IMG/VR virus record: IMGVR_UViG_3300042922_000542
Location: 62,001-126,000 of that record
Length of the DNA stretch: 64,000 bases
Reading direction: 5' to 3' (one strand)
A program made the position numbers and the translations under genes. Of the stretch, positions 17,401 through 56,657 are shown in pieces. The notes beneath the pieces are model-generated. The model did no database searches and was not told the origin of the DNA. It was given only the letters and a program-made list of their open reading frames with translations. Position 1 is the first letter of the stretch. The number at the start of each line of letters is the position of its first letter.

Positions 17401-18400
17401 ATATCAATTAAATTTTATTCTTAAAGTAGCTCCGTCCGCACAGGCAACGATGGATTCAGGTGTGTTAGCTTCGGTACGTATAGCACAAGCTATTATAGAA
17501 TCAAATTGGGGGCGTTCAAGTCTTACAACAGAGGGTAATAATTTATTCGGTATGAAAGCATTCGCTGGTTGGTCTGGGCGTCGTATAAGTAAACCAACTA
17601 AAGAATGGAGTGCGTCTAGTGGAAATTATCAAACTAATGCTAGTTTTAGAGCATACGGTAGTTGGGATGAGAGTATTGCAGACCAAGCTAATAACTATAC
17701 CAAAGTTTCAGCTTATAAAAGTTCTGGCTTACTTGGAGAAAAAGATTATAGACAAGCCTGTATTAAGATACAAAAATCAGGTTATGCGACAGACCCGGCA
17801 TATGCTAATAAATTAATACAGATGGTTGATCGATATCAATTAACCTATTTCGATCATCCTGTAACTAAAGGTGCAACTGCTAGCAGTCGTTACTATTCCA
17901 ATAGAATGACGATGCAAGACATGGCTGCATTAAATATGTCATCGGATAATAATCCTATGGGTGGTGGTATTCCGTCATATGATAATTCTGGGAGTTCTAT
18001 ATTTACTTCACGTAAATCAAATGTACCGAATGCCGGTTATGGAAATAAATCTTCATCACGTAAAATTAATCGTGGTTATGGAGCTAAGTTCCCTAATGCT
18101 ATAGGTGGATCATTTAGCGATACATATGAATACGATCAAAATATTAAAAGTGCATCAGGTATGGGCATGGGTAATATCAATGAAAAACTAGAATTATTAT
18201 TATCTGCAGCTCTTAATGAATTAAAGGCAATCAATAATAATACGGGTGGTTCTACATCTGCATTGCAAGAATTAGTAAGTGCCAGTGGAAATAATGGTTC
18301 TGGTTCACAAACTAAAACTGCGACACGTAGATCGTCAGCACCCCCATTGAATAATAACTCTAACATATCATCAGTATTATCAATTGTAAAACCTTTATAA
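11471..18400 (+). CDS. Tape-measure-like tail protein with C39-like peptidase, M23 peptidase and GH73 glucosaminidase domains
   Basis: Long Gly/Ala/Ser-rich helical N-terminal region. C39-like: SGCGPIAA...GHFII...MDP. M23: HRGVD...MHL...STGPHLHY. GH73: AQAIIESNWG...NNLFGMK...GYATDPAYANKLI. Likely ATG at 11483. Confidence 0.85.
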   Translation: MVKVMSTAKISAKNGSIAAPYIKRASGLLKGATAEYIREYMPTSVSTIESMKDTIKPFSASISNAGSVIAKTKELTAQQNLRKINDWFFGMNSSFDNGSADSDLSFDIEVGNSSEIIMAQLSAEERSANQISKTVVETSHRMVEAQLSATANILTSMDKVGAAVVSGFDNINNTLNKLLEVTTKNTSALIATSVAASVGSNSNNPMLSSGKFNLNAYKKLISSNVQGSEFGMLTAILPILTGSMGREMLSSDNLSKMGFAALMNKTNPNLKKNMEALDKSINGILMNSLIRLGDKRDQNNLIGTLGRIFGMDTNQKRLSTGRTNLEFKAVPFDTVAKESLVSTIPGYLRQILVQLGGPDQIYDYRSRSFRSKGAIARDFKDAAATSNSFRYASGSVRNTVGRYGNNDANYSNLRDMIHDLIMEDMGGSSRDRNHVSAQLSSEATAKKYINSLLKNSGINRGNGRAIGQLAKGYSSLDAQGLYDLRQQSITSSMKRNANLQEYIDNANMFGVDLSYISNTRDDNKNEIIRRYTGKSSSSIINSKSGISTGGTDYTNSALYEIYRRLNTGINVFQVGSSNEKSNKYKWIGKLPAPSSHSTNSDSETDKSSKPLVSSLTGHTDHTNMLLEDGKSGKVGKWASASGKNLVNALFNGNAEDVRIAFGQMVGDISEVASKPIKDFLIGNESANKKGVFAKINDSFGNVTGYFKHKFMGTGYEYTDESGKMVKVANNEKGGIIGYLKDNVMDVFKGGKNKAGKWLNDVYKYFDFGKSEGNTSSKKRAIISASVGAMAGLGFLGGPLGLLTGAIAGTALDSSNFGNILKEKLFGKDEFDKDGKSKHKTGIIEKVVNNITDPLRYQIGKTFDTAGNVLKKNILGPLSDIGFAIKERASNAAGSAVGKFFSQIFKGAGWIAKQALNIPLALAGIPIAYQGNAARAGMQVGGAVAGTGMNFIADMISGKSGREKLRDRRKERADQIKADKDASGYYEGGVFGSYKSWKKKQDEARSNKSNLSDYMASDKTVVDASIKTEENTSAMAKDIGSLTYHATHHDPITNSSIYTSDKGVYEKITDIFDLLKRRFDGGSGLSSLSGADGVNSILSAASGIGTQSGLSMEDVEDISSIADESNRGKPNKRSILSRFKNLLKRNASSNNTDGVSEKSKGMLSNIAGSVGDFIKDVLPSWAVPLGGLMLSLLSPAIKSIVWGDGENEGIVPQLGAAILSYITGNTSNESGSTSLPKSIGGINSSLNEIATGPLLSNAKIGGINITGSTDPIGLFGTFNNSKRAISGFKTLKSSASAASKVVKESVPLAQRFGAKFAVKAAMTSGAKTVTQTTLKGTAAGIFKGVKGSIKFLSSLLSFALDSIIMLFQGNEVFGKDKYSASLVQQASLIIGGALNGTGSGFADGFQWADIIDIAGNALKWTAVGAAMGSVVPILGNGIGAVLGFILGLILGMWGGKTLAKQIGNLFENSGASRATNYVGRDLYAKGHGFGSDVSSFVKGIGSKALNYIKSAAGSIANYVSSMTGKAKDIFNLMKNCNTNSGVNGYLKLISDISNIVSNTGSGGGRSFDLFSTAYRGHGSMYYQGNYGSVLDMNQSGCGPIAASYIANSYGRNITPMQAAQFLNNSGFRDSSGGTSSLGIAAINKQLGIPMASSGVNINAIGNKLSRGEPVALLGKSNDPNSPYTKSGHFIIADGMDSSGNITVMDPLNPTKRKYDINSIMNGAQEATYADGGVGYGDESKLNKGNPLNKSFRITSPFGDNSPFRGGISHRGVDMVPQDGSKQAQVGAAYNGTIVAIKSNIPDSFTGINDNTRRNSTGNYVSYKTPQGITVTNMHLKANSIPSNLRIGSSIRPGDKIGDMGSTGMSTGPHLHYQFKDDKGNYINPTASITGGATMNNFNSSASPYIASSNDGGIFSQLSSILGNTASKVMSFFGLSDSSTSSSINTTGDANSSDIIFSKAKNLDTSYTDYPGRSMGIESYQLNFILKVAPSAQATMDSGVLASVRIAQAIIESNWGRSSLTTEGNNLFGMKAFAGWSGRRISKPTKEWSASSGNYQTNASFRAYGSWDESIADQANNYTKVSAYKSSGLLGEKDYRQACIKIQKSGYATDPAYANKLIQMVDRYQLTYFDHPVTKGATASSRYYSNRMTMQDMAALNMSSDNNPMGGGIPSYDNSGSSIFTSRKSNVPNAGYGNKSSSRKINRGYGAKFPNAIGGSFSDTYEYDQNIKSASGMGMGNINEKLELLLSAALNELKAINNNTGGSTSALQELVSASGNNGSGSQTKTATRRSSAPPLNNNSNISSVLSIVKPL

Positions 18401-32130: not shown

Positions 32131-34476
32131 ATGAATTACAGTGAAAAATTTATTGAAAAAAATATAGCTGAGCTATCACGCGAATACGACAAAATATGCG
32201 GCGCAAATAAGAACTTGGCGCGTGTTGTCCCAACATATATAGATAGCTGTAAGCCTGTTGCAAGACGTCTTTTGTATATAATGTATCTGAAAGATCAAGG
32301 CAAAACCTTTAGAAAGGTTGCAACGATAACTGGTGATGTAATTGGACGTATACATCATCATGGGCCATCTTCAGTATATTCATGCTTAGTGAACTTGGCT
32401 CAATGGTGGAATAATAATATCCCACTAATAACCGGGGATGGTAACTTCGGAACCGTATCTGGTGATGAGGCTGGGGCTGATAGATACATATATGCAAAGC
32501 TGTCTAATTTTGCATTTGATTGTTTCTTTGCAGATTGGAGAGAATCCGCGGTAGATATGGTTTTGGGTGCTGATGAAGAAACTTATGAACCATTATATTT
32601 GCCAGCAAAATATCCGATTATTTTGTTAAATGGTACATTGGGAATAGGATATGGCCTTGGAGCTAATATACCACCATTCAACTTCAAAGATGTTGTAACT
32701 GCTACTATTAAGCTGATGAAAAATCCAGATGCTGACATATTATTGATCCCTGATTCACCAACTGGTTGTGATATTGTAGAAGGTAATTTTAAGAAAACAG
32801 TAGAAACTGGTAGTGGTGTATATACAATGCGATGTAAGTATGAAGTAGATGCAGCTAATAATATTATAACTATTCTTGCGTTACCTTATCAAACTACAGT
32901 TAATTCAGTTCGTGCTAGAATTGCGGATATCAAAGAAAATAATGGATTGCCAGAATTAATCAATATGCAAGACCACTCTGTATCATCTGTTGATTTAAGA
33001 TTGTATATTAGAGATGATGTCAATCCATATAAATTCATGCGAAAACTAATTTCAGAGGTTGCTGGATTGGAAAGAACGTATCCAGTCAATATCACCGTAA
33101 TCGATGACTTCAAATCATATGACTGGTCCATTAAGAAATTATTAATAGAATGGATTAAATATCGTCGTGAACAAAAGAGAATTATTATTAATCATAAACG
33201 TACTAATATATTGGCAGATCAACGAACAAATGACGTTAAAATATTCTTAATGAGTGAGCATAATTTAGATAGAACAATAGCACTATTTAGATCTAGCCGA
33301 AACAGAAAAGATATTGAACAGCGACTAATTGATGAATATAAGAATAGTGAGATCAGAATGGATAGTCTTCAAGCTAAGGCTTTATCTGACATGCGTCTGC
33401 ATGAATTAACAATTGAATCATACGAAAAGTGCGTTGAGTATCGAGGTGAATTGATAAAAGAGCTAGACTATGTTGAGAAAATATTAGATGAAGATGGTGG
33501 CATTGATAGATTGATAATAGATGAACTTAATGAAGGTGTAAAGAAATATGGTGTTGCGAGACGATCTAATGTTGTACCATATCAAATTACAGTTAATACC
33601 GACGTATCAGGTGAATGTATGTTGGAGTTATCATCCGACGGAATGATAATTAGGAGGACATCGACTAATGTTGATGAAGAGCCAGTACCTTCAGACATCA
33701 ATGGTTTTGCTGTGAAAGTTCATAATGATTCATCATTTATAGCAGTTGATACGAAAGGTGATTTCTCGTTTATATCTGTTAAAGAATTACCAGTAGATCA
33801 AGAGGTTCCCCTCCTAAGATATATTAAGAGACCATTAACAGACATCGTTGCATTATTACCATATGATATAGATTCTAATGCATGTTGTACATTAATATCC
33901 AAAAATGGTGTAATTAAGAAATTTAAAATATCAGAAATGAGACCATCCAAAAAGCCATGCATTGATATAACTAAAGATGATAAAATTGTGAGGGGTATAA
34001 TTACAAAGGATATCATAACACATAAAGATATATTGATATTTACTCAAAGGGGATATGGTCAGAGATTAGATCCTAATAATATTAAACTAACATCATTTGC
34101 AGCAAAGGGTATGAATGGATTTAATCTTGATAAAGATGATGAAATAGTTGGATGCTATGCAATAGACCCTAATAACAATTATCTATTATATGTAACTATG
34201 AAAGGTAAAGCCAGATTGAATCTTGCAGAATTCTTACCTGTTAGAGATAGTAAGAGAGATGCAATGGTTCGTTTAATAGCACTTAATGACAGGGACCATC
34301 TGCTATCTGTAATCGGATGTAATCGTAGCGATAAACTTCAGCTATTCTTCAATGATGGTACCGATGAGACTATCAATATTAAGAATATTAGTGAAGGTAC
34401 TATGTCATCACCACCTGAAAAAGTTGTATCTAAAAACATGGTATCAACTTCTGTGCTTAAAGTAAAATTATTATAA
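32131..34476 (+). CDS. gyrA: Type IIA topoisomerase A subunit (GyrA/ParC-like) with beta-pinwheel CTD
   Basis: DSCKPVARRLLY, HHHGPSSVY, GNFG, GADRY (catalytic Tyr), PAKYPIILLNG; repeated CTD blades (e.g. GYGQRL...KGMNGFNL). Confidence 0.92.
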   Translation: MNYSEKFIEKNIAELSREYDKICGANKNLARVVPTYIDSCKPVARRLLYIMYLKDQGKTFRKVATITGDVIGRIHHHGPSSVYSCLVNLAQWWNNNIPLITGDGNFGTVSGDEAGADRYIYAKLSNFAFDCFFADWRESAVDMVLGADEETYEPLYLPAKYPIILLNGTLGIGYGLGANIPPFNFKDVVTATIKLMKNPDADILLIPDSPTGCDIVEGNFKKTVETGSGVYTMRCKYEVDAANNIITILALPYQTTVNSVRARIADIKENNGLPELINMQDHSVSSVDLRLYIRDDVNPYKFMRKLISEVAGLERTYPVNITVIDDFKSYDWSIKKLLIEWIKYRREQKRIIINHKRTNILADQRTNDVKIFLMSEHNLDRTIALFRSSRNRKDIEQRLIDEYKNSEIRMDSLQAKALSDMRLHELTIESYEKCVEYRGELIKELDYVEKILDEDGGIDRLIIDELNEGVKKYGVARRSNVVPYQITVNTDVSGECMLELSSDGMIIRRTSTNVDEEPVPSDINGFAVKVHNDSSFIAVDTKGDFSFISVKELPVDQEVPLLRYIKRPLTDIVALLPYDIDSNACCTLISKNGVIKKFKISEMRPSKKPCIDITKDDKIVRGIITKDIITHKDILIFTQRGYGQRLDPNNIKLTSFAAKGMNGFNLDKDDEIVGCYAIDPNNNYLLYVTMKGKARLNLAEFLPVRDSKRDAMVRLIALNDRDHLLSVIGCNRSDKLQLFFNDGTDETINIKNISEGTMSSPPEKVVSKNMVSTSVLKVKLL

Positions 34477-34597: not shown

Positions 34598-36739
34598 ATG
34601 GCTAGTATAGAAAAGATTTTAGACGATCTTCAATTTAATATAATTGATGCTAATACCGCAGCTAAATATCTATCTGATAGTAAAAATAAGAAAATTGTGA
34701 ATTATTTTATTAATAGAGATAAAATAACAACCGAGCCCATTAGTGAATCTGAATTACCGCAACTGAATGCAATAGTACAGATAGCTCAAATCATTGAAAC
34801 CTCAGGTGGTATATCTCCACTATCCGATGATGATTACGATACATTACAAGAAATGCTTATTAATGAAGGCATCCCAAGATTAACAGGATCGGTTGAGATA
34901 AATGATAATAAAAAAGAGAGTCATAGTTATCAACAATTACGTGGAACCCTTGATAAGGTATATTATCTTAGAGATAGTGAGAAACGTACAAATCGCAGTA
35001 GAAAATATTTATCCGAATGGATTAAACGAATATCATCTAAGTATGAAAAAGCAACGGGTAAAAAAATTAATCTGAATGAGTGTAAGGTTATAGTTACCCC
35101 AAAATTTGATGGGGCATCAGCAATTGTTGAAATATCTGAGGATAATAAATTCTTATGGTTATCTAGGGGGGATACAAAAAATAATAGGGCATCAAATGTA
35201 TCTCACATATTATCTAGATTTAATGATTTATATGTTGACACTCCAAATCATGGTATAAAATTTGAAGTAATGATCAGTGAAGAGAATAAAGATTATATTA
35301 ATCAAGTATACCGTGACAAATATTACAGAAATTCGCGTCAAATAGTTACGGCTATATTAAATTCTAATGATCCGGATTTTAAAGCTGAGTATCTATATCC
35401 AGTTCCATTAAGGATTATAAAACAAGGCGACAAAATTGAAACAATACATCCCGATCTAATTAAGAAGTTTCCATCATTAGCATGTTCGCTTTCTGATATT
35501 GATAGAATATATGAATTTGCAATGTCCCATAGATATATAGAATTAAATAAAATGCGATTTAGAACGGATGGTGCGGTTATAACATTAACAGATCCAATAC
35601 TTCAAGAGATATTGGGCAGAGATGATGATATCAATAATTTCGAAGTTGCATATAAATTTACAGAAGAGAGTGCGTATACAAAGGTAGTGGGAGTCGAGTT
35701 CTATACATCTGTATTCGGATTCATTACTCCAGTATTAGTTGTTGAAAGCGTAATCCTCAAAGGGAATACAATAGACCATATAAGTTTATCAAATAAAGAA
35801 CGATTTGATGAATTAGATCTTCATTACGGTGATATGGTTAAAGTATTATACGATATAATACCATATGTGACTATAGACGATCAGTGTATTAGAAGCAGAG
35901 GTAAACGTATTGAATTTATTGAGAATTGTCCTAGATGTGGGAGTGCTTTAGATTTAAATGTTGTACAGGTTCAATGTAGTAATAAGGAATGTCCATCAAA
36001 AGTTATAGGTCGTATTTTGAATTATTGTGACAATTTGAGAATTCGCAATATCGGTTCTCAAACAATTGAAGCGTTATACAATAATGGCTTTCTAGATAAT
36101 GGGATTCGTAGTTTATATAAACTTAAGAAACATAATTTAGATATAGAAGAGCTTGATGGATTCGGTAGATTAAAAACCCGTAAGATTATTGCTGAAATCG
36201 AATCTAAACGCAAATTACGCGATTATGAATTTTTCGGTGCAATCGGAATTGAATCATTATCAACTAAAACCTTTAAAAGTATATTCTCTAATATTAAATA
36301 TTCTAAATTTGATCAAATGATCTTTACTAAAGAATTTGATGAATTAGAGAATAGTTTAAAACGAATTACCGGCATTGGTGATGCAAAAGCTAAAGTATTG
36401 GTTGATTATTTAAAGGACCCTGTAACTCGTAAAGAATTACCTAAACTATTAAAGGAAATTATAATTCAAGAGACTTATGGTAATAATAATTCCAGTAAAG
36501 GTAAAATCGTATTTTCTGGAATTAGACCAGATGAAACCAATGAACTATTGATAACCAATAAAGGCTGGGAGGTATCAGATGCATGGAATAATAAAGCTAG
36601 TTATCTAGTGATCCCTCATGCAGGATATGAATCAACTAAAGTTGAAAAAGCTAAATCAGCAGGTGTTCCAATCATTCCAATTGGTGATGGTAACAGTCTC
36701 ATGAAGATATTGGAGAAAAATATACCTAATTTAAAATAA
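34598..36739 (+). CDS. ligA: NAD-dependent DNA ligase
   Basis: Domain Ia LSDDDYD, adenylation TPKFDG, LSRGD, RTDGAV, AYKF, Zn finger CPRC...C...C, HhH motifs, C-terminal BRCT (GKIVFSG). Confidence 0.92.
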   Translation: MASIEKILDDLQFNIIDANTAAKYLSDSKNKKIVNYFINRDKITTEPISESELPQLNAIVQIAQIIETSGGISPLSDDDYDTLQEMLINEGIPRLTGSVEINDNKKESHSYQQLRGTLDKVYYLRDSEKRTNRSRKYLSEWIKRISSKYEKATGKKINLNECKVIVTPKFDGASAIVEISEDNKFLWLSRGDTKNNRASNVSHILSRFNDLYVDTPNHGIKFEVMISEENKDYINQVYRDKYYRNSRQIVTAILNSNDPDFKAEYLYPVPLRIIKQGDKIETIHPDLIKKFPSLACSLSDIDRIYEFAMSHRYIELNKMRFRTDGAVITLTDPILQEILGRDDDINNFEVAYKFTEESAYTKVVGVEFYTSVFGFITPVLVVESVILKGNTIDHISLSNKERFDELDLHYGDMVKVLYDIIPYVTIDDQCIRSRGKRIEFIENCPRCGSALDLNVVQVQCSNKECPSKVIGRILNYCDNLRIRNIGSQTIEALYNNGFLDNGIRSLYKLKKHNLDIEELDGFGRLKTRKIIAEIESKRKLRDYEFFGAIGIESLSTKTFKSIFSNIKYSKFDQMIFTKEFDELENSLKRITGIGDAKAKVLVDYLKDPVTRKELPKLLKEIIIQETYGNNNSSKGKIVFSGIRPDETNELLITNKGWEVSDAWNNKASYLVIPHAGYESTKVEKAKSAGVPIIPIGDGNSLMKILEKNIPNLK

Positions 36740-41632: not shown

Positions 41633-42142
41633 ATGGATATTATAATCAAAATAGAGGATAATCAAATCGCAGAATTAGTTAATAAAACATCAGAGGAAAT
41701 CGGGACTGAATACTTTGCTGAAGCAATGAAACAGGGATTCGCAAAGTATATTGACAAAGAATTAGAAGCTGCATTTGGGTGTATACATAAAACATATGTA
41801 TCCGATCGGGACCGAAACGCTGATAAAGATAATCAAATTGCTGAGTCATTTATAAGGAATTTATTTGTAAAGGCCAATAAAAATACATACAATCATACTA
41901 CTACATATGAACCGACTGAATATATGAATACGGTAATACGTAACATACCAATGCAAGAAACTCTAGATAAATATAGGGATGATCTCATAGCATCATTACA
42001 TGAGAATATTGATAAATATATAGCTATATTTATTCGTGATATGTTCATAGGTAATATCTTTGATAATCGAACATTCCGTACAGCATTAGCTACCGAAATG
42101 GATATGGCTATTATAAGGCATACTGATTACTCAAAAAAATAA
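41633..42142 (+). CDS. Hypothetical protein
   Basis: 169 aa; followed by the hairpin ATTATAGATGGCC...GGCCATCTATAAT. Confidence 0.7.
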   Translation: MDIIIKIEDNQIAELVNKTSEEIGTEYFAEAMKQGFAKYIDKELEAAFGCIHKTYVSDRDRNADKDNQIAESFIRNLFVKANKNTYNHTTTYEPTEYMNTVIRNIPMQETLDKYRDDLIASLHENIDKYIAIFIRDMFIGNIFDNRTFRTALATEMDMAIIRHTDYSKK

Positions 42143-42204
42143 TTAATGAAATAATTATAAATTATAGATGGCCGATTATGGCCATCTATAATTTTTTATA
42201 ATTA

Positions 42205-42489
42205 TTATTCCGCTGTGATAACATCACCATTTATTTTAACATCTGTACTTTTATTTGCATCACATATTTTTTTAATTGCAGAATCATCAGCTGTTATTTT
42301 AGCTGAATATGTATTTGGATTGTCGCAAACTGATGGGACAGTTTTTATATCTGATATTTTATCCGATTCACATTTGCATACATCGAACACCTTAGAGAAT
42401 CCTTCATATTTATTATGCATGAAGTCTGTCATTTCCGATTTGTCGTCCGGTAATACCTTACCAAGATATTCCGGTTTATATTTATTCAT
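42205..42489 (-). CDS. Hypothetical protein
   Basis: ATG at 42489 after GGTGAG (the track starts at 42507). Confidence 0.65.
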   Translation of the reverse strand: MNKYKPEYLGKVLPDDKSEMTDFMHNKYEGFSKVFDVCKCESDKISDIKTVPSVCDNPNTYSAKITADDSAIKKICDANKSTDVKINGDVITAE

Positions 42490-42525
42490 GATTATCTCAC
42501 CACACAATTCAATCGTTTTTTTATT

Positions 42526-42558
42526 AAAAAAGAAAGGGAATATTATTTACTCCCTTTC
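42526..42558 (-). terminator. Intrinsic terminator directly after the -1 frame stop
   Basis: Minus strand GAAAGGGAG-TAAATAATA-TTCCCTTTC-TTTTTT, 8 nt after TAA 42566. Confidence 0.8.
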
Positions 42559-42565
42559 CATCAGT

Positions 42566-42751
42566 TTATAATAATGAAGGATGTTCTGCGTTCCGTTTCC
42601 TTCTTAACTCAACTATCTTTAAAAAATGGGATTTAGGTAAATCATAGATATATTCGAATGTAGGATCTCCCTTAAAGATATTGCCCAATTCTTCTATGAA
42701 TGCTAGGATCTGATCAGTTTGACCTCGCTGCTGTTGAGAGATTGGGCTATT
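42566..42751 (-). CDS. -1 frameshift extension (61 aa) of the 609-aa protein; gp51/GT-like
   Basis: NSPISQQQRGQTDQILAFIEELGNIFKGDPTFEYIYDLPKSHFLKIVELRRKRNAEHPSLL*. It has no start of its own (in-frame TGA just upstream) and is entered via T TTT TTA at 42757..42751. Confidence 0.7.
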   Translation of the reverse strand, partial: NSPISQQQRGQTDQILAFIEELGNIFKGDPTFEYIYDLPKSHFLKIVELRRKRNAEHPSLL

Positions 42752-44532
42752 AAAAAAAGCAATGTCGACATGTCATCGATATTTATTTCACTCTTAGTAT
42801 GACATTTTGGACAAGATAAATCTTTTAATGTGAATTTAAATTTATAAGGATCAGTCATTAAATCCATTAATTCACTTATAGCTTTGCAATCTAATTCATC
42901 GAGCGTATGTATTACTTTCATAATGTCAGACCCATTGGCTATTTTTCTATACTTGTCACTAGTAATATCAGGTAATAGAATATATTTAATTACAGTTAAA
43001 CAAGATATTTCAAATAGACTTGATATAAATGCAGTTTCACTTTCTTTTACTGACACGATATCAGTTAATCTTGAATTTAAATAATCATAAGCCGAAATAT
43101 GCCCAAAGCAAAGAATAAAACCTGAAGATGGTAATTGCACACTATTTGCCAATTTAAGCATGGAGCCATCATAGTGTTCCATTATAGCATCATGATCCAT
43201 CAATTCGCCAGTAATTTTCATATCTTCCAATGTAACAACTGGAACGCTGCTCATTTGTATTAATGTTTTTGGATCATAAATCCAATCATAAACATTATTA
43301 CAATTCTTACCATGGCAGTCAATAGATACTATTTCTTTATCAAGACATGTTGCACAAAGTATAGCCCATAGCGCATATTCTAAATCGATAAATGATGTCT
43401 TCTTTAAGAAATCTTCAAATGCTGAAACCTTAATAACATTGCCAGTTGCATCTGCATATTCATATTCCTTAAAATCACCAATTGATGGATTCTTTATATG
43501 ATTGAATACTATAGACCACTTCTTTAATTCGCCATCTAAATTATTTAATTCTTGTGAATAAGACAAGTCCAATATTTCAGGATATGATAAACCTGTAAAT
43601 GTCGCACGATATTTTGATGCCGGCATAGACACTCTCATGTCATTCATTTTTCTTGTATATTGTTTTAATATAGCATCAATATTCAATGGACTATCAGCAC
43701 TATTATCTTCTTCTATAATGCTATATTCCATATTTTTTGTTTCAATGATATTTAATGTAACAGATCTAGATTTCTTAATCTTTTCAACTTCTTCTTTAGT
43801 GAAAGATATCTCTGGTACATTAGTTTTATCAATAATAATTTTAGACTCTGCGATTGTGCCATCCACTATTGGTTCGGTCACAACGGCCGCTTTAACTACA
43901 TCATCTGCAACGGCTGGTTCATCTCGATGTATAGCGCTAATCATAGTTGGTTGTATTTCGTTTACATCGGGAGTTACATTAACTTCCTTCTCTTCAATAT
44001 GAATTCTCTCTACAATCGCATCTGGAAATTGCTTAGTAATTGTTGAGATCAAGTCATCTAATCTCTGACCAGCCTTTACGGGATCTATATCTGAAGCAGC
44101 ATCCATTATACGACTATTAAATATAGTAGGTATATTTAAGTGTTTTATACCAAGACGTGTTTTGCTACATTCTATATTATAAACGGCTCTATCCATTTCA
44201 TCCATTTGATCAGCTACATGTTCAGATACTTTATCATCAAGAATATTTTTCAATTCATTTGGTTTTGATTTTTCTTCTAGTTCTTCCTTACTAAGAACAA
44301 CGCCTGTTGAACGTTTCATTTCGGTTAAACCTTCAAGTACACTATCATCCGGAACCCACTCTCCAGTGGATTCATCATTTGTCTTTTTAGGCATTTCCTT
44401 TCTGATAGGGGTCATGACTTCTTTATTTTCCGCATCACTTTTAAATATATCATTATTGGATATATTATGCTGCTCTGCATAATTATTGATCATATCAAAA
44501 ACACCAGAGGATTTATTAATTTGATTATCCAT
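42703..44532 (-). CDS. Tail/baseplate-hub assembly chaperone-like protein (T4 gp26-like C-terminus with two Cys pairs)
   Basis: SD AAGGAG; acidic disordered N-terminal half; CHGKNC and CPKC Cys pairs; ends ...DDMSTLLFL at the slippery site. Confidence 0.55.
   Translation of the reverse strand: MDNQINKSSGVFDMINNYAEQHNISNNDIFKSDAENKEVMTPIRKEMPKKTNDESTGEWVPDDSVLEGLTEMKRSTGVVLSKEELEEKSKPNELKNILDDKVSEHVADQMDEMDRAVYNIECSKTRLGIKHLNIPTIFNSRIMDAASDIDPVKAGQRLDDLISTITKQFPDAIVERIHIEEKEVNVTPDVNEIQPTMISAIHRDEPAVADDVVKAAVVTEPIVDGTIAESKIIIDKTNVPEISFTKEEVEKIKKSRSVTLNIIETKNMEYSIIEEDNSADSPLNIDAILKQYTRKMNDMRVSMPASKYRATFTGLSYPEILDLSYSQELNNLDGELKKWSIVFNHIKNPSIGDFKEYEYADATGNVIKVSAFEDFLKKTSFIDLEYALWAILCATCLDKEIVSIDCHGKNCNNVYDWIYDPKTLIQMSSVPVVTLEDMKITGELMDHDAIMEHYDGSMLKLANSVQLPSSGFILCFGHISAYDYLNSRLTDIVSVKESETAFISSLFEISCLTVIKYILLPDITSDKYRKIANGSDIMKVIHTLDELDCKAISELMDLMTDPYKFKFTLKDLSCPKCHTKSEINIDDMSTLLFLIAQSLNSSEVKLIRS
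42751..42757 (-). promoter_or_regulatory. Slippery heptamer U_UUU_UUA (-1 programmed frameshift)
   Basis: 0-frame codons CTT TTT TTA place TTTTTTA in exact X_XXY_YYZ phase. Confidence 0.7.
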
Positions 44533-44600
44533 GATTTATAATCTCCTTCATAAAATTATATTTTTTATTATTAATACTAAAGTAATATACGTTGATTTAT

Positions 44601-45872
44601 TTAATTATAATATTTCATCATAAATATAAAATAATTAAATATCCCTCTTCTATAATAAATGATAGTAGCTTCTCTATTATAATCTTGACGAATATCTATA
44701 ATATCATCCATCCAATAATCTAGGGTTTCCTTTATCAACTTATGCTGTTCTATCTTAGATGTGCCGAGTGATCTATATAATGCTAATCCGAAGTTTATAA
44801 ATTCAGCAGAATCTACATCATTACTTGAAAATTTTTCATCTGATTTAAATAAATAAACTACATTTTCAATGAATATATTTAATTTATTTTTTTTATTCGC
44901 GTATATCTTGTTTAAATATCCGACTAAATTATCTTTATTAATGTTTACTGCATCTGCAACTGCTCCTGCAATTGATAAGTTCACTGAGTTTATTAAAAAT
45001 TTATTATATAAATTTTCACTAGTTGCAGCAATATCGGTCATAGTTCCTTCATTATCAACAAATTTACCGTCATCCATTTGATCTACTTGTGAATGCATTG
45101 TTGCATCCTTTTTATAATTATCATAATATTTATTTGCAATATTTTTGAATGCTGAATTTAATTGATTTCTGATACGTACTGTAAAATCTATTAATTCATG
45201 ATCGACTCCGGTTTTAAGTTTTTCTGTATGGAAATCTAATGCCGAATGAGCAATATACTTTAACAAACCAAGTAGATTTTTTTGTTTCTTTATACTAAAT
45301 CTATTTGGTAGATGCTCAATTGTATATTCCATTACATCCGCTTTAACCTCTGCACCGATTTTCCAATATTTTCTAAATACTAATGGGTACTCAGCAAATA
45401 CCGATAAATACTCGCAACACTCTATGATATCAGTATAATTTTTATTAAGACTTTCACTTATCATAGCTGCAATAAATAACTTGTGTATTGCAGATCTTAG
45501 TGTTTGAAATTTACTTTCACCCTGATATGCTACCTTTATCATTTCATCAAACATTTCTATCAGTTCTTTATGGGTAACACCAAACAGATCATACAAAAAT
45601 GCTGTTTCCTTTTCATTAAATGAAAATATATACACCGGTCCGGATGTCAATAATTTAGACGAATTATCATCTATAAATTTACCAATGAAATCTATTATCT
45701 TATCTCGATTTGAAGCTACAGCTAGTGTTGGTGCTATTTTTTTGTCGATAAGATTTTCCTTTAAATAATAACTTTTATTTTTTACCAATGCCTCTAAAAA
45801 TACATTAGATGAATTATTTTCTTCTATAGCATTTTCCATATACGTTTGATATAGCGCCGGGTTCTTATACAT
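44601..45872 (-). CDS. Hypothetical helical protein
   Basis: SD AGAAGGAG; 423 aa; no motif recognised. Confidence 0.8.
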   Translation of the reverse strand: MYKNPALYQTYMENAIEENNSSNVFLEALVKNKSYYLKENLIDKKIAPTLAVASNRDKIIDFIGKFIDDNSSKLLTSGPVYIFSFNEKETAFLYDLFGVTHKELIEMFDEMIKVAYQGESKFQTLRSAIHKLFIAAMISESLNKNYTDIIECCEYLSVFAEYPLVFRKYWKIGAEVKADVMEYTIEHLPNRFSIKKQKNLLGLLKYIAHSALDFHTEKLKTGVDHELIDFTVRIRNQLNSAFKNIANKYYDNYKKDATMHSQVDQMDDGKFVDNEGTMTDIAATSENLYNKFLINSVNLSIAGAVADAVNINKDNLVGYLNKIYANKKNKLNIFIENVVYLFKSDEKFSSNDVDSAEFINFGLALYRSLGTSKIEQHKLIKETLDYWMDDIIDIRQDYNREATIIYYRRGIFNYFIFMMKYYN

Positions 45873-45984: not shown

Positions 45985-48558
45985 ATGAAAATTAATCATA
46001 TTAAATTAGAAAATGCTGCCGGCATTTTAGTCGGCCAAAATAAAAGAGTTCTAGATATTGATCTTACAAAATCTCAAAATGCATTAATATCAATTCAAGG
46101 TGATAATGGATCTGGTAAATCTGTATTATTATCATCACTCTCACCATTTGCATCTACCACATCATTAGATGAGCGAAGTTCTATTCCATACATAATCGCT
46201 GGTAAATTGGGTTATAAGGAAATACATTACAATGATATGGGTAAAGATATAATTATAAAGCACTATTTTAAACCTAATACTACTGGCAGTCATTCTGTAA
46301 AAAGTTATTTTCAACTTAATGGCGATGAGCTAAACGAAAATGGTAATGTTACTTCATTCTTATCATTAGTTGAAATTCATATGGGTATTACCCCCGAGAT
46401 GATGAGATTAATACGTTTAGGGACTAATGTCAATTCATTTACATCATTAAAGCCAGCAGATAGAAAGAGTTATGTTGGTAAATTAATTGAAGAGATCGAT
46501 CTATACATGAAAGTATATAAAAAGATAAATGAAGATTTGAGAATCCTGAAAGTACTAATGTCAACTAATGCGAATAATCTCCACAATTGTCATATTACAG
46601 ACATTATTGTAGAAAAAAATAAATTGAAAGATTTAGAAGATGAGATAAATATATATGAAAGTAAAAAATACCAACTTCAATTAAAGATTGATAAAATATC
46701 TGCACTCGAAACTGAAAATAATTTATCCGATCTTATAAATAAACGAAAAGAAATAGAAGTTTCATTATATGATTTTAATAAGACTGAATGTGAGATTAAA
46801 GAAAAATCACTTACCGATACTAGTGTTGATGATTTAATTAAACACAGGTCTAAAATTATTGATAATAAAATAGATTTACAAGCCAATATCAATGCCATGC
46901 GTTTAAGTATTGATGATTCATTAAGCCGCATTGATAATATATCAGCGATTGTGAAAAAGACTATTTCTAATAATGATATTGAATCATTGATCTCATTAAT
47001 TCAGGACTTAAAAGATCGAATTAAAAATACTAATGATATTGTAAAAGGATTTTATCCAACTGGTTGCACATCCGATGATATAACCCGACTTATTAATAGT
47101 CTATCATCATTTAATCAAATAGGATCGATGATGTATACATTTGGCAATAAACCAATATCAATATATTTGAAATTACGTCGAGAGAACATACAAATTGATT
47201 CATTCATAAAGGATCATATCAATCGAAATTTAGCTACAGTCGGTGATAATGAAATAAAGAGATTATTATCTCAGGTATTTCAAAATGATATTATAATTAC
47301 ACCTAATTGTGATACTGAATTTGAGGAATGCCCATATTATAGATTCTCTGAAATGATAAATGATTTTAGAAATAAAGTTGACGATAATGTTTATGATGAA
47401 GAAACTTTACGCTATCTGCGAGTGGTAGCTAACAACGTAGATACTATTTTGAATGAAATCGATTCTTTGATGCGAACAGTTCGTATACCTGACGGGTTAA
47501 AGGACGGTTTATATGAACGAGATATACTAAATCGTCTAGATAGTAAATTGCCCTTATTTGAATTATCATCTATACAAGAATATTTATCATTATTGAAATC
47601 ATATGAATTATATAAAATCGATCTTGAAAGATTAGAGCAATGTGAAGCTCAACTATCAATATATAAATCATCAGGTATCGATAGTCAATTGGCTGAAATT
47701 AAAGTATTGGAAGATAATATATCTAAACATAAATCTAGTATTATGACAAAAGAAAAGGATCTATTGAAATTAGAAGAAGCACTTGATAATATTGAATTTA
47801 ATATAGGACTAATGACTAAATTCAATGATAGTAAAAAATACAAAACTATGATGCAAAACAGTCTAAATGATATAAATAAAATACTAGTCCCATTAGAAGA
47901 ATCTTCTGGACAAAAAATGGAATTGAACTATAAGCTTCGGGAATATAATCATACTATTGATTTATTGAAGTCTGAATCAAAGTATCTTGAAAATCGAATA
48001 AATGAATATCGTAAATTAATAATCGAAAGTGAAAAATTAAAAGATAAATACAATAAGTTGAACATAATCGCAGAATCGGTATCAACTAGAAAAGGTATAC
48101 CGCTAATATATATGAATACATATTTAAGACGAATAGAAAAATTAACTAATGAATTACTGTCAATCATATATGGCGGGGATCTATATATTGATAAATTTAA
48201 TATCACTGCTGATACATTTGAGATTCCGTACGTTAAAAATGGGACGGTGATTCCTGATATTAGATATGCAAGTCAATCGGAATCGGCATTAATGACAATG
48301 GCATTATCATTTGCTCTTGCATATAATGCTACTGGGAAATATAATATATTGCTCCTTGATGAAATTGATTCCGGTTTAGATGAAAGAAATCGTTCTGCAT
48401 TCTTACAAATGCTACGTAGAATAATGCAGAAGATTCAGTCTGAGCAAGTATTTATTATATCTCAAAATGCATCACAAATAGTAAATTTACCAATGGACGT
48501 AATTAAAACAACTGACGTACAGATATCAGGTAAAATGCAGCATGTAATATATGAATAA
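45985..48558 (+). CDS. SMC/Rad50/SbcC-like ATPase
   Basis: Walker A GDNGSGKS, long coiled coils, degenerate signature ASQSE, Walker B/D-loop LLLDEIDSGLD. Confidence 0.85.
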   Translation: MKINHIKLENAAGILVGQNKRVLDIDLTKSQNALISIQGDNGSGKSVLLSSLSPFASTTSLDERSSIPYIIAGKLGYKEIHYNDMGKDIIIKHYFKPNTTGSHSVKSYFQLNGDELNENGNVTSFLSLVEIHMGITPEMMRLIRLGTNVNSFTSLKPADRKSYVGKLIEEIDLYMKVYKKINEDLRILKVLMSTNANNLHNCHITDIIVEKNKLKDLEDEINIYESKKYQLQLKIDKISALETENNLSDLINKRKEIEVSLYDFNKTECEIKEKSLTDTSVDDLIKHRSKIIDNKIDLQANINAMRLSIDDSLSRIDNISAIVKKTISNNDIESLISLIQDLKDRIKNTNDIVKGFYPTGCTSDDITRLINSLSSFNQIGSMMYTFGNKPISIYLKLRRENIQIDSFIKDHINRNLATVGDNEIKRLLSQVFQNDIIITPNCDTEFEECPYYRFSEMINDFRNKVDDNVYDEETLRYLRVVANNVDTILNEIDSLMRTVRIPDGLKDGLYERDILNRLDSKLPLFELSSIQEYLSLLKSYELYKIDLERLEQCEAQLSIYKSSGIDSQLAEIKVLEDNISKHKSSIMTKEKDLLKLEEALDNIEFNIGLMTKFNDSKKYKTMMQNSLNDINKILVPLEESSGQKMELNYKLREYNHTIDLLKSESKYLENRINEYRKLIIESEKLKDKYNKLNIIAESVSTRKGIPLIYMNTYLRRIEKLTNELLSIIYGGDLYIDKFNITADTFEIPYVKNGTVIPDIRYASQSESALMTMALSFALAYNATGKYNILLLDEIDSGLDERNRSAFLQMLRRIMQKIQSEQVFIISQNASQIVNLPMDVIKTTDVQISGKMQHVIYE

Positions 48559-54839: not shown

Positions 54840-56657
54840 TTATATTTCAGCCGTATCGTCTTGTGCACCTTCAGCACTATAATCAATGAATATACATTGA
54901 TTTCCAGATATTAATAGTTTAACTAACTCGCTAGCAGCCATTAATACATTAACATCTGTCTCTACTGAAGTTATTACTTTATCACTATATTTAAGGCTTT
55001 CTAAATCGAATACTTTATTAGATTTAATTGATTCACTTATTATTTCAACGCATTTATGATTGATAATATCCACGAGCTGATTTGCATCAGTAAGCTCACT
55101 AACATTAGGAATCATCTTAATTATTCCATTATTTTCAGGACCATGCAATACTTTAGCATATAAATTTGTTGATGCATTTTTTATTAATTGAATTATTTCA
55201 ATTCTTAAAATATCATCCGGTGTTTTAACATCCACTGCATTAGATAATAACTCTTCACATGCTCTAACAATCGAAATTTGACATCCCGGTACAATACCAT
55301 ATTTAGATGCAGATGCAACAGCCTTGATAACATCATCGACCGTATCATATAAAATATTCGCTTGTAATGTTGAATCAGCTCCTACATAATAAATGAAATT
55401 CTCCATCTTCAATTGAGATATTCTTGCATTAATTTTAGCGATATCTGCAGCATATGCTTTTCTATCATTATCGATCTTAGATAATATGCTTTCTAATTCA
55501 ATTTCAGCATTATGTAATTGCTGTTGATATTTTTGATTCTCTGTCAAATCATCGACTGTGAATACAGATCCGTCATAAATTGATAATGAAGCACTTTTAA
55601 TATTACCAAGTATATCAAATTTATTCTCAGTAATTATGTCATATTTATCAATAGTACTAGCTGCCATTAATTCATCATTAATTGTTTTAAATAAATCCAT
55701 TGTAATAGGCTGGCATCCTATTATAACTGATAAATCTTCCATCTGGGATGGAGCCAAGCTACCATATTTATATTGTGTTAATATTAAATTTAAGCCGTTA
55801 TTATTTCTATATTCAGCATTTATGTAATTTTTCAATACAGTTTTAGCTAATAGCTCATCATATGCTGGTGCAAGAATTAATATCTTTTCATTGTTAGGAC
55901 GATAAATCTCATTTACGGTTTTAATAAAATTTGTGAATGTGTCATTATCTATTTTATAATCGAATAATAACACTTTAACATTTTCCTCTGTTGTGCTTAA
56001 ATCTTCATTTTTACAATAAGCTTCATCAATTAGATTAGCCGGAAATTCAAAACCCTTAACTGTTCTAATATAGCTCTTATTAGTAGGGGAATTTTTAAGT
56101 TTAATAACAGGTGATTTAGCAGCATTATAAATCTCCGATATATTTTTACTGATTTCAATATTACCATTGGATGCTATATAAGCTACGTCATAAATCATCT
56201 GATTGTCCTCAATTAAAGTGCCATACGATTTTACTAGCTCGGTGATTTCTTCAATGCTTCTATCCCAAGTGTGTGTGAATGTTCTTGGCAGACGATATAA
56301 TCTATCGAGTGTTTCTTTTCGTTGCATATATTTATTGAATAAAATGTTTGTCATCACTATTGCAGTTGTTGTTGCATCCCCAACTGTGTTATTTAATTTA
56401 ACGCATGGTGCCTTAATTAAATTATAAATCATAGTTTTATATTTATTACGGAATCTCATATTTTTAAATATTGTAAATCCGTCTTTTGTTGCTGATGTAT
56501 AAGCACCATCGATAATTAATGAATGCGATCCCAATGGTCCTAATGATTTACCTAGTGTTTCAGCAATTGTTGAGAAAACTTCTAAAGCTAATGTATTAAA
56601 CTCTTCAGCTTTCATAATATTGGCATTTGTTTTATTACTGTAATCTAAAAAATTCAT
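54840..56657 (-). CDS. groEL: Phage-encoded GroEL/Cpn60-like chaperonin
   Basis: LGKSLGPLG, TKDGFTI, VGDATTTA, YGIVPG; 605 aa. Confidence 0.85.
   Translation of the reverse strand: MNFLDYSNKTNANIMKAEEFNTLALEVFSTIAETLGKSLGPLGSHSLIIDGAYTSATKDGFTIFKNMRFRNKYKTMIYNLIKAPCVKLNNTVGDATTTAIVMTNILFNKYMQRKETLDRLYRLPRTFTHTWDRSIEEITELVKSYGTLIEDNQMIYDVAYIASNGNIEISKNISEIYNAAKSPVIKLKNSPTNKSYIRTVKGFEFPANLIDEAYCKNEDLSTTEENVKVLLFDYKIDNDTFTNFIKTVNEIYRPNNEKILILAPAYDELLAKTVLKNYINAEYRNNNGLNLILTQYKYGSLAPSQMEDLSVIIGCQPITMDLFKTINDELMAASTIDKYDIITENKFDILGNIKSASLSIYDGSVFTVDDLTENQKYQQQLHNAEIELESILSKIDNDRKAYAADIAKINARISQLKMENFIYYVGADSTLQANILYDTVDDVIKAVASASKYGIVPGCQISIVRACEELLSNAVDVKTPDDILRIEIIQLIKNASTNLYAKVLHGPENNGIIKMIPNVSELTDANQLVDIINHKCVEIISESIKSNKVFDLESLKYSDKVITSVETDVNVLMAASELVKLLISGNQCIFIDYSAEGAQDDTAEI

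What the first reader, a model, noticed from the sequence alone, without database searches (positions are those of the whole stretch)
42526..44532. Programmed -1 frameshift giving a G/GT-type protein pair in a jumbo phage, far from the tape measure gene
Seen: the 609-aa ORF has CTT TTT TTA (U_UUU_UUA in slippery phase) 15 codons before its stop. The -1 frame is open for 61 codons, reads like protein (FIEELGNIFKGDPTFEYIYDLPKSHFLKIVELRRKRNAE) and has an in-frame TGA just upstream, so it has no start of its own. The terminator follows the -1 stop, not the 0-frame stop. GCCCAAU 3 nt downstream can pair with AUUGGGC about 50 nt further on. Products would be 609 and about 655 aa. Known: lambda G/GT tail chaperones use this mechanism, while T4 encodes gp26 and gp51 separately. 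Inference: a Zn-binding gp26-like domain plus a gp51-like tail made by frameshifting would link the two systems.
Basis: partly seen in the sequence, partly recalled or inferred. Interest (0 to 1): 0.8.

Follow-up and report, generated by a model that had tools for sequence, protein, structure and literature searches.

The report
Conserved frameshift in baseplate-hub chaperone gene
A jumbo-phage gene related by fold to the phage T4 baseplate-hub assembly proteins gp26/gp51 very probably makes a short and a longer protein by a ribosomal -1 slip on a run of U's, and the same unannotated arrangement is present in AR9, PBS1-type, Staphylococcus and Yersinia jumbo phages and in many uncultured ones.

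Summary
The 609-aa ORF (42703-44532, minus strand) carries CTT TTT TTA 15 codons before its stop. The -1 frame is open for 61 more codons with no start of its own, and a terminator follows the -1 stop. What makes it real is comparison. In 36 distinct related loci (25-65% protein identity) the same conserved Phe codon is preceded by NTT. These loci include cultured phages AR9, BpSp, SA1, MarsHill and phiR1-37. In all of them the -1 frame is open for at least 48 further codons to the contig end (63-99 where complete), against 12% stops per codon upstream. The encoded peptide is conserved, has a -1-frame codon signature and sits at a fixed distance from the slip site. Many loci have no start codon. 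The canonical heptamer is not the conserved element: most relatives have U_UUY in a run of only 4-5 U. That favours a tRNA-Phe ribosomal slip over transcriptional slippage or sequencing error. Residues 291-609 have the T4 gp26/gp51 fold with four invariant Cys. Similarity of the -1 tail to the gp51 C-terminus is only suggestive. No product has been shown, and I found no published report.

The parts
42703..44532 (-). 0-frame CDS, 609 aa (short isoform). ATG at 44532-44530, TAG at 42705-42703.
   Evidence: 221 full-length homologs and 339 clusters at 50% identity
44543..44546 (-). Shine-Dalgarno-like GGAG, 10 nt upstream of the ATG
   Evidence: read from the sequence
43663..44532 (-). N-terminal region (residues 1-290). 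Partly disordered, with a confident helical module at about residues 97-176. It is variable or absent in AR9-type relatives (398-475 aa).
   Evidence: AF2 model; tblastn covers only residues ~300-600 in cultured phages
42706..43662 (-). C-terminal domain (residues 291-609) with the T4 gp26/gp51 (PF12322-type) baseplate-hub assembly fold
   Evidence: pLDDT mostly above 90. Foldseek BFVD hits to 'baseplate hub assembly protein, T4-like' with E 1e-7 to 1e-4 and TM on the target of 0.5-0.62. ESM Atlas feature score 0.94 and TM 0.77 to clusters with PF12322.
43300..43317 (-). First Cys pair, C406 and C411 (invariant in 148 homologs); half of a presumed Zn site
42802..42813 (-). Second Cys pair, C574-P-K-C577 (invariant); the other half of the presumed Zn site
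42751..42759 (-). Slip site CTT TTT TTA (T7 run 42758-42752; F593 codon 42756-42754). The family-wide core is NTT TTY.
42566..42757 (-). -1 frame extension. It is 63 codons counted from the re-read Phe, plus TAA at 42568-42566. The long isoform would be 655 aa. A three-helix mini-domain is predicted.
   Evidence: AF2 pLDDT 84 with helices 8-27, 34-38 and 42-58
42706..42750 (-). Dual-coding overlap. The 0-frame tail IAQSLNSSEVKLIRS and the -1 frame are both conserved in relatives.
42741..42747 (-).
   Evidence: pairing possible in most relatives; covariation not above shuffles
42683..42689 (-). 3' arm (AUUGGGC) of the putative stem; it lies in the E-L-G codons of the -1 peptide
42523..42559 (-). 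Intrinsic-terminator-like hairpin plus T run, 6 nt after the -1 stop
   Evidence: phiR1-37 has an annotated terminator in the same place

Best explanation
The gene encodes a jumbo-phage relative of the T4 baseplate-hub assembly proteins gp26/gp51: an N-terminal extension followed by a Zn-binding PF12322-type domain.

Most ribosomes terminate in the 0 frame and give the 609-aa protein, whose last 15 residues are conserved. A fraction slip back one nucleotide when tRNA-Phe sits on the conserved UUU/UUC codon (F593), which is always preceded by U (NUU_UUY). In this genome the run is lengthened to U7, which gives a canonical U_UUU_UUA. After the slip, translation continues in the -1 frame for 61 codons. 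It replaces the 0-frame tail with a Pro/Ser-rich linker and a conserved three-helix module (..EELG.LFKGDP.F.YI..LPKS.FLKIVELRRKR..), and stops just before the terminator. The long isoform is 655 aa.

Shown here: the sequence anatomy, its conservation, the coding signature of the -1 frame and the fold of the main domain.

Inferred: that the shift is ribosomal, what its efficiency is, and what it does. The proposed function is that the two isoforms act together as non-virion assembly factors for the hub or tape-measure part of the tail. The extension would serve as an extra binding module, by analogy with lambda G/GT and with the T4 short/long paralog pair gp26/gp51.
For: 1. In 36 distinct loci the codon before the conserved Phe is NTT in 36/36, and the Phe codon is TTT (31) or TTC (5). 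Elsewhere in the same genes CTT is only 29% of Leu codons, and Leu-Phe dipeptides use CTT in 3 of 34 cases.
2. The -1 frame has 0 stops in 2040 codons after the site. The density is 0.121 per codon upstream and 0.112 per codon in the +1 frame.
3. The most variable codon phase switches from 0-frame position 3 upstream (entropy 1.44) to -1-frame position 3 downstream (1.53). Both frames are constrained in the overlap.
4. The -1 peptide is conserved from 25%-identity subfamilies to AR9, BpSp, SA1, MarsHill and phiR1-37. The LF[KD]G motif lies 26 codons after the Phe in most subfamilies.
5. The -1 ORF always opens upstream of the T run, often only 2 codons before it. Fourteen of the 36 loci have no ATG/GTG/TTG before the motif, and SD-like sequences are almost absent. 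GenBank annotators had to use a CTG start (AR9 gp229) or internal ATGs that cut off conserved residues.
6. Run lengths of 4-5 U in most members argue against polymerase slippage. A run of five identical bases is a recognised backward slippery motif in annotated phage frameshifts (PMC10885494).
7. Terminators follow the -1 stop.
8. The fold assignment rests. T4 gp26 and gp51 are listed as hub assembly chaperones, and gp51 is absent from particles (PMC3004832). The BpSp virion MS found the neighbouring gp25-like protein but not the homolog gp286. phiR1-37 g241/g242 carry no 'structural protein' note, unlike their neighbours.
Against: - No protein, reporter or ribosome-profiling evidence exists for the long isoform.
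- The common site (U_UUY with poor re-pairing of the upstream tRNA) is a weak, non-canonical slip site.
- No conserved stimulator was demonstrated. RNAalifold finds no consensus structure. The long-range stem shows no covariation above shuffles. The downstream 90 nt is only mildly more stable than shuffles (mean z -1.3).
- A few subfamilies have an ATG in the -1 frame near the 0-frame stop (L039, L040), so separate initiation is possible there.
- No natural in-frame fusion was found among the 353 proteins at hand.
- Sequence profiles do not link the family to PF12322 significantly. Only fold and language-model evidence does.
Confidence: 0.8

Rival explanations
1. Transcriptional slippage. The phage or host RNA polymerase adds one extra U in the T run, so a subset of mRNAs encodes the fused 655-aa protein in one frame.
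For: The site is a homopolymeric T run. It is 7 T here and 8 T in BpSp. One inserted nucleotide gives exactly the -1 frame. AR9-type phages transcribe late genes with their own non-canonical multisubunit RNA polymerase (annotation), whose slippage behaviour is unknown.
Against: Most family members have only 5 T, and five loci have 4 T followed by C. From my own knowledge, that is far below the roughly 8-9 bases needed for appreciable slippage by bacterial RNA polymerases. The conserved requirement is a U before a Phe codon in a fixed reading phase, which is a ribosomal rather than a polymerase feature.
Confidence: 0.07
2. Two separate proteins. The -1 ORF is an independent small gene, translated by coupling or re-initiation or from a non-canonical start near the upstream stop, as current GenBank annotations assume.
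For: Annotators called small ORFs there (AR9 gp229, SA1 QPI17155, phiR1-37 g242, MarsHill 177). Some subfamilies have an ATG close to the 0-frame stop (L039, L040/41).
Against: No start codon is conserved, 14 of the 36 loci have none before the conserved motif, and SD sequences are almost absent. Annotated starts truncate conserved residues. The -1 frame is kept open through the whole 7-19-codon overlap back to the T run in every locus, although stops are frequent just upstream. The spacing from slip site to motif is fixed. The slip-site nucleotides are conserved at synonymous positions. None of these features would be needed for a separate gene.
Confidence: 0.08
3. Artefact or decay. A homopolymer sequencing error or a recent frameshift mutation has split one ORF, or the open -1 frame is an accident of composition.
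For: T7 runs are error-prone. The heptamer motif itself occurs at chance frequency in the window.
Against: An independent assembly at depth 91 gives the identical sequence. The same -1 arrangement occurs with different run lengths in 36 distinct loci from many samples and in complete genomes of cultured phages. The 0-frame tail after the site is itself conserved as protein in more than 120 homologs and always ends at the same position. The -1 frame carries a coding signature.
Confidence: 0.01

Closest known systems
Lambda G/GT and the conserved tail-assembly-chaperone -1 frameshift of tailed phages (Xu, Hendrix and Duda 2004; seen only as reference 38 in PMC9024508; the content is my own knowledge)
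   Same: A -1 shift near the 3' end of a tail-morphogenesis gene gives a short product and a C-terminally extended one. The extension ORF has no start of its own. The relatives' proteins look non-virion. The arrangement is conserved while the sequences diverge.
   Different: The protein family and fold differ. There is no TAC Pfam or PHROG match, and the best PDB TAC hit (HK97, 2ob9) has E=7. The gene does not lie between tube and tape-measure genes. It sits next to a gp25-like wedge gene in AR9-type phages and about 24 kb from the 2309-aa lysin/tape-measure-like ORF in this window. The extension is short, about 62 residues replacing 16. The usual slip site is U_UUY rather than a canonical heptamer.
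Phage T4 gp26 and gp51, baseplate hub assembly chaperones (Pfam PF12322 T4_baseplate)
   Same: The fold of residues 291-609 matches. Both have two Cys pairs about 100-170 residues apart (C406/C411 and C574/C577 here; CTC and CPEC in gp26; CPKC and CC in gp51). A conserved Phe lies 14-16 residues after the second pair. AR9-type relatives are adjacent to a gp25-like gene, as T4 gene 26 is to gene 25. T4 has a short form (gp26 ends 3 residues after that Phe) and a long form (gp51 continues for 49 residues), which parallels the two isoforms proposed here.
   Different: T4 uses two separate paralogous genes and no frameshift; the end of gene 26 has no T run. Pfam does not detect PF12322 in this protein, and profile-profile scores are insignificant. 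This protein has an extra N-terminal region of about 290 residues. Homology of the -1 tail to the gp51 C-terminus is only suggestive.
Phage T7 gene 10A/10B capsid frameshift (my own knowledge; not checked with the tools)
   Same: A -1 slip of tRNA-Phe on G_GUU_UUC close to the end of the ORF adds a C-terminal extension of about 50 residues to a minority of molecules. One relative here (L005) has the nearly identical G_GUU_UUU.
   Different: The T7 case is a capsid protein of a small podovirus. The proteins are unrelated and the biological role differs.

Membership tests
Programmed -1 ribosomal frameshift (recoding site) | Slippery sequence that allows tRNA re-pairing in the -1 frame, conserved at nucleotide level, including synonymous positions | tested here: met
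   NTT TTY in 36/36 distinct loci. T at the wobble position of the preceding codon is invariant, against 29% CTT usage and 3/34 at other Leu-Phe dipeptides. The canonical X_XXY_YYZ occurs only in this window and in L012.
Programmed -1 ribosomal frameshift (recoding site) | Overlapping -1 ORF that lacks its own initiation signals, is conserved and evolves as coding sequence | tested here: met
Programmed -1 ribosomal frameshift (recoding site) | Stimulatory element (downstream structure or upstream SD-like sequence) | tested here: inconclusive
   No RNAalifold consensus. The stem GCCCAG/CUGGGC plus CCUC/GAGG is 83% paired, against 24-53% in slid registers, but covariation is reached by 88 of 500 shuffles. 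Mean MFE z is -1.3.
Programmed -1 ribosomal frameshift (recoding site) | Detection of the trans-frame protein | not testable with these tools
   No proteomic data could be examined. The papers found do not mention it.
Lambda G/GT-type tail assembly chaperones | TAC fold or family (Pfam or PHROG tail assembly chaperone) | tested here: not met
   No TAC hit for either part. One -1 peptide of 28 hit phrog_3096 at E=7e-4, in a charged coiled-coil region. The PDB HK97 TAC hit has E=7.
Lambda G/GT-type tail assembly chaperones | Position between the tail tube and tape measure genes | tested here: not met
   In this window the neighbours are an unknown 423-aa gene and a 100-aa gene. The lysin/tape-measure-like 2309-aa ORF is at 11471-18400. 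In AR9-type phages the gene lies between a gp25-like gene and GroEL.
Lambda G/GT-type tail assembly chaperones | Short and long products made from one gene by a -1 shift, both needed for tail assembly and absent from virions | tested here: inconclusive
   The two-product architecture is met (see above). Absence from virions is hinted at for relatives only. The requirement for assembly was not tested.
T4 gp26/gp51 (PF12322 T4_baseplate) | Sequence match to PF12322 above the Pfam threshold | tested here: not met
   No hit at E<=1. hhalign probabilities were 8-22%.
T4 gp26/gp51 (PF12322 T4_baseplate) | Same three-dimensional fold | tested here: met
   Foldseek against BFVD gave about a dozen 'baseplate hub (assembly) protein' hits, probability 1.0, TM on the target 0.5-0.62. 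The ESM Atlas agrees by features and by structure. All of these are predicted models; there is no solved structure.
T4 gp26/gp51 (PF12322 T4_baseplate) | Two conserved Cys pairs (presumed Zn site) | tested here: met
   C406, C411, C574 and C577 are invariant in 148 sequences. Metal binding itself was not tested.
T4 gp26/gp51 (PF12322 T4_baseplate) | Role in baseplate hub assembly | not testable with these tools
   Only synteny with gp25-like genes in cultured relatives is available.

The most novel reading that the evidence does not exclude
One gene plus a -1 frameshift is the jumbo-phage equivalent of the T4 paralog pair gp26 (short) and gp51 (long). On this reading the short and long isoforms are the contractile-tail hub counterparts of lambda G and GT. 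The shared domain would hold the hub or tape-measure complex, and the extension (homologous to the gp51 C-terminal domain) would recruit a second partner. That would give the long-enigmatic gp26/gp51 a mechanistic model. It would also define a second, independently evolved, widely conserved frameshift-controlled chaperone pair in tail assembly.
Probability: 0.25. Interest if true: 0.8.

Novelty: new variant of a known kind. Interest (0 to 1): 0.62.

Why it matters
Conserved -1 frameshifting in tail morphogenesis has so far meant the G/GT chaperones next to the tape-measure gene. This looks like a second recoding site of that kind, in an unrelated protein family.

- **Reach.** The family (hub assembly proteins with the gp26/gp51 fold) spans hundreds of sequence clusters of jumbo phages. 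It includes cultured, genetically tractable phages: AR9/PBS1, BpSp, the Staphylococcus S6/MarsHill/SA1 group, Listeria LPJP1 and Yersinia phiR1-37.
- **Annotation.** The small downstream ORFs in those genomes have implausible or truncated starts and should be re-annotated as frameshift extensions.
- **Recoding.** The family is a natural series of minimal U_UUY slip sites (4 to 8 U) for studying non-canonical -1 frameshifting.
- **T4 biology.** It suggests a testable model for what T4 gp26 and gp51 do, a question left open since the classic hub-assembly genetics.

Tried and rejected
- **Sequence families.** Pfam and PHROGs scans of both parts gave only unknown-function families (phrog_18873) and no TAC or PF12322 hit. 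The single phrog_3096 'tail assembly chaperone' hit was not reproduced in the other 27 -1 peptides, so I dismissed it.
- **DNA similarity.** DNA-level search against phages found nothing.
- **Solved structures.** Foldseek against the PDB found nothing significant.
- **Extension structure.** Foldseek of the 63-aa extension against BFVD was not significant (best E=0.7).
- **RNA structure.** RNAalifold found no consensus structure.
- **T4 profiles.** hhalign of the family against T4 gp26 and gp51 gave only knuckle-to-knuckle or weak matches.
- **Natural fusions.** A search for in-frame fusions among 353 collected proteins found none.
- **phiKZ.** HMM scans of the first 50 kb of phiKZ gave no homolog. 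phiKZ gp31/gp31.1 overlap in the -1 frame, but gp31.1 has its own SD and start, so this is ordinary.
- **Paralogs.** No second gp26/51-like paralog was found in the window.
- **Reads.** Only assembler contigs of one DNA run were available, so rare variants and RNA could not be examined.
- I re-ran it with the permitted rows only.
- **Other subfamilies.** tblastn with more distant subfamily members added phiR1-37 and the Staphylococcus jumbo phages, but no Chimalliviridae.
Full report
**Observation.**
The finding lies on the minus strand. The ORF 42703..44532 encodes 609 aa. Near its end the 0 frame reads TTG CTT TTT TTA ATA. The T7 run is 42758-42752, and 15 codons follow TTA before TAG at 42705-42703. 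The -1 frame has TGA at 42775-42773 and is then open to TAA at 42568-42566. A terminator-like hairpin (42559-42531, then a T run) follows the -1 stop. GCCCAAT (42747-42741) can pair with ATTGGGC (42689-42683).

The heptamer motif alone is not unusual in this AT-rich window (23 matches against 20.5 expected). The case therefore has to rest on other evidence.

**Origin and error check.**
The window is part of a 246-kb IMG/VR contig. It encodes a GroEL-like chaperonin, topoisomerase II, an NAD-dependent ligase, an SbcC-like protein and a 2309-aa protein with peptidase and lysozyme-type domains. This is a jumbo phage distantly related to the AR9/PBS1 group. An independent Logan assembly of the one public run that holds the sequence is identical across 42400-44700 at word depth 91, with no indel. 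That run is probably the source sample, and contigs hide rare variants. The stronger argument against a homopolymer error is therefore comparative.

**Comparative evidence for recoding.**
The protein has 221 close homologs. An exhaustive search found 339 clusters at 50% identity. All full-length close homologs end at the same position with a conserved 0-frame tail, LLF-I[VI]A[QR]SLSSVQVxLK[RK]x.

I fetched DNA for these loci:
- IMG/VR loci
- metagenome loci
- contigs of three distant subfamilies at 25-30% identity
- GenBank records of AR9, SA1, BpSp, phiR1-37 and MarsHill

In 36 distinct loci the results were as follows.
- **Slip nucleotides.** The conserved Phe codon is TTT or TTC, and the preceding codon is always NTT (CTT 32, GTT 2, ATT 2). 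This gives runs of 4 to 8 T. The wobble T of the preceding codon is invariant. CTT is only 29% of Leu codons in these genes, and other Leu-Phe dipeptides use CTT in 3 of 34 cases.
- **Open frame.** The -1 frame is open from upstream of the run for at least 48 further codons (63-99 codons in loci not cut by a contig end) in every locus. In the 34 distinct loci tested there were 0 stops in 2040 codons. The same frame has 0.121 stops per codon upstream, and the +1 frame has 0.112.
- **Codon phase.** The most variable codon phase moves from 0-frame position 3 upstream to -1-frame position 3 downstream. Variability is reduced at all phases in the overlap.
- **Peptide.** The -1 peptide is recognisably homologous across the whole family (..[LF][LI][ED][EL][LF]G.[LI]F[KD]G..[ST][FL].[ED][IL]..[LM]P...[FL]..). 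Its LF[KD]G motif lies 26 codons after the Phe in most subfamilies.
- **No start.** The -1 ORF has no conserved start. Fourteen of the 36 loci have no ATG, GTG or TTG before the motif, and SD-like sequences are almost absent. In many loci a -1-frame stop lies only two codons before the run.
- **Current annotation.** GenBank annotators gave AR9 gp229 a CTG start. They began the SA1, MarsHill and phiR1-37 small ORFs at internal ATGs that cut off conserved residues.
- **Terminator.** In phiR1-37, as in this window, a terminator follows the -1 stop.

**Mechanism.**
The family-wide element is NUU_UUY followed mostly by AUA or AUU, but also by CAU, CGG, CAC, UAC, CUG and ACC. The common denominator is that tRNA-Phe can re-pair one base back on U-UU. 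The tRNA on the preceding CUU codon would re-pair badly.

I therefore infer a single-tRNA (Phe) -1 slip. It resembles the T7 gene 10 site G_GUU_UUC (my own knowledge), and one relative has G_GUU_UUU. A run of five identical bases is among the backward slippery motifs catalogued from annotated phage frameshifts (PMC10885494). Runs of only 4-5 U make transcriptional slippage unlikely, although I could not examine RNA reads.

It is 83% paired, against 24-53% in slid registers. Both arms lie in doubly or strongly constrained codons, however. Covariation does not exceed shuffles (88 of 500), and RNAalifold reports no consensus structure. The 90 nt downstream of the site folds somewhat more stably than shuffles (mean z -1.3 over 33 loci). 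A stimulator is possible but unproven, and the efficiency is unknown.

**What the protein is.**
AlphaFold2 with a 148-sequence alignment gives mean pLDDT 82, and residues 291-600 are mostly above 90. Nothing in the PDB matches. In BFVD the model matches three groups:
- the AR9-type proteins
- uncharacterised proteins of several other jumbo phages (Special G, Eowyn, RSF1, RP12, phiEaH2)
- with probability 1.0 and TM on the target of 0.5-0.62, about a dozen proteins of 216-290 aa named baseplate hub subunit or T4-like baseplate hub assembly protein

The ESM Atlas links residues 290-609 to clusters carrying PF12322, both by features (0.94) and by structure (TM 0.77). T4 gp26 and gp51 both belong to PF12322. 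The T4 tail review lists both as hub assembly chaperones, with gp51 absent from particles (PMC3004832).

Four Cys (C406, C411, C574, C577) are invariant, and the slip-site Phe is more than 90% conserved. Sequence profiles alone do not reach significance against PF12322 or T4 gp26/gp51. Membership is therefore at fold level.

In AR9-type phages the gene follows a gp25-like wedge gene and precedes GroEL. In this window those neighbours are different. The BpSp virion proteome detected the gp25-like protein but not the homolog. This is consistent with an assembly factor, but it is weak evidence.

**The extension.**
It is predicted as a short Pro/Ser-rich linker followed by three helices (pLDDT 84). 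It has no significant structural or family match.

T4 gp26 ends three residues after the Phe that aligns with the slip-site Phe. gp51 continues for 49 residues after the equivalent Phe. Its homologs carry a second Pfam domain, PF28602, in that region. A profile of the -1 peptides aligns to the very C-terminus of the gp51 family: FKGDPTFEYIY-DLP--KSHFLKIVE against [26 protein letters not shown], with P=0.016. In column-shuffle controls, 0 of 200 and 4 of 200 shuffles reach the observed score. This is suggestive, not proof.

If it is true, these jumbo phages make from one gene, by frameshifting, what T4 makes from two paralogs.

**Comparison and novelty.**
The logic is that of lambda G/GT: one tail-morphogenesis gene gives a short and an extended product by a -1 shift. 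The family, fold, genomic position and slip site all differ, so it is not a member of the TAC family. I found no paper describing recoding in gp26/gp51-like genes or in these jumbo phages. The library is incomplete, however; in particular I did not find or read the original AR9 genome paper in it.

I rate it a new variant of a known kind. It is well supported computationally, untested experimentally, and directly testable in cultured phages.

Noticed in passing
window 11471-18400 (+): A 2309-aa ORF (GTG start) with metallo-endopeptidase and lysozyme/endolysin-type domains at residues ~1744-2144, plus a faint tape-measure PHROG hit. It is probably the giant tail lysin or tape-measure-like protein of this phage (compare phiKZ gp181, from my own knowledge).
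   Followed up: partly
window 54840-56657 (-): A GroEL-like chaperonin (phrog_5725, E=1e-64). In AR9, BpSp, SA1, MarsHill and phiR1-37 the GroEL gene lies one to three genes downstream of the frameshifted gene. Here it is 12 kb away, so the local gene order has been rearranged.
   Followed up: partly
window 42159-42194 (both strands): A perfect 16-bp palindromic hairpin with T runs on both sides, between the convergent ORFs 41633-42142 (+) and 42205-42507 (-). It looks like a bidirectional terminator.
   Followed up: no
L001:4795-4995 (AR9 gp229); L002:4975-5133 (SA1); L046:3457-3624 (phiR1-37 g242); L047:3433-3630 (MarsHill 177); L045:3768-3908 (BpSp gp285): The small ORFs annotated downstream of the gp26/51-like gene in published genomes start at a CTG or at internal ATGs inside the conserved -1 peptide. 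They are probably mis-annotated frameshift extensions.
   Followed up: yes
L044:7740-7900 (T4 genes 26/25): T4 gene 26 ends three codons after the Phe equivalent to the slip-site Phe. Gene 25 starts in the -1 frame, overlapping its stop (TAATG). There is no T run, so this is ordinary stop-start coupling, but the parallel in position is curious.
   Followed up: partly
Genes homologous to window 42703-44532 in loci L003-L047: Outside the slip site these genes avoid CTT before Phe codons (3 of 34 Leu-Phe dipeptides, although CTT is 29% of Leu codons). This suggests selection against accidental U runs elsewhere in the gene.
   Followed up: partly
BFVD hits A0A191ZCG4 and A0A191ZCG7 (Erwinia phage Special G): The main domain matches a 539-aa Special G protein (E=9e-9). 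The extension's third-best, non-significant structural neighbour is an 86-aa protein of the same phage with a nearby accession. This hints that the arrangement may extend to other jumbo-phage lineages.
   Followed up: no
window 32131-34476, 34598-36739, 45985-48558 (+): Topoisomerase II, NAD-dependent DNA ligase and an SbcC-like nuclease subunit flank the locus. The frameshifted morphogenesis gene sits on the opposite strand among replication and repair genes, not in a tail gene cluster.
   Followed up: no
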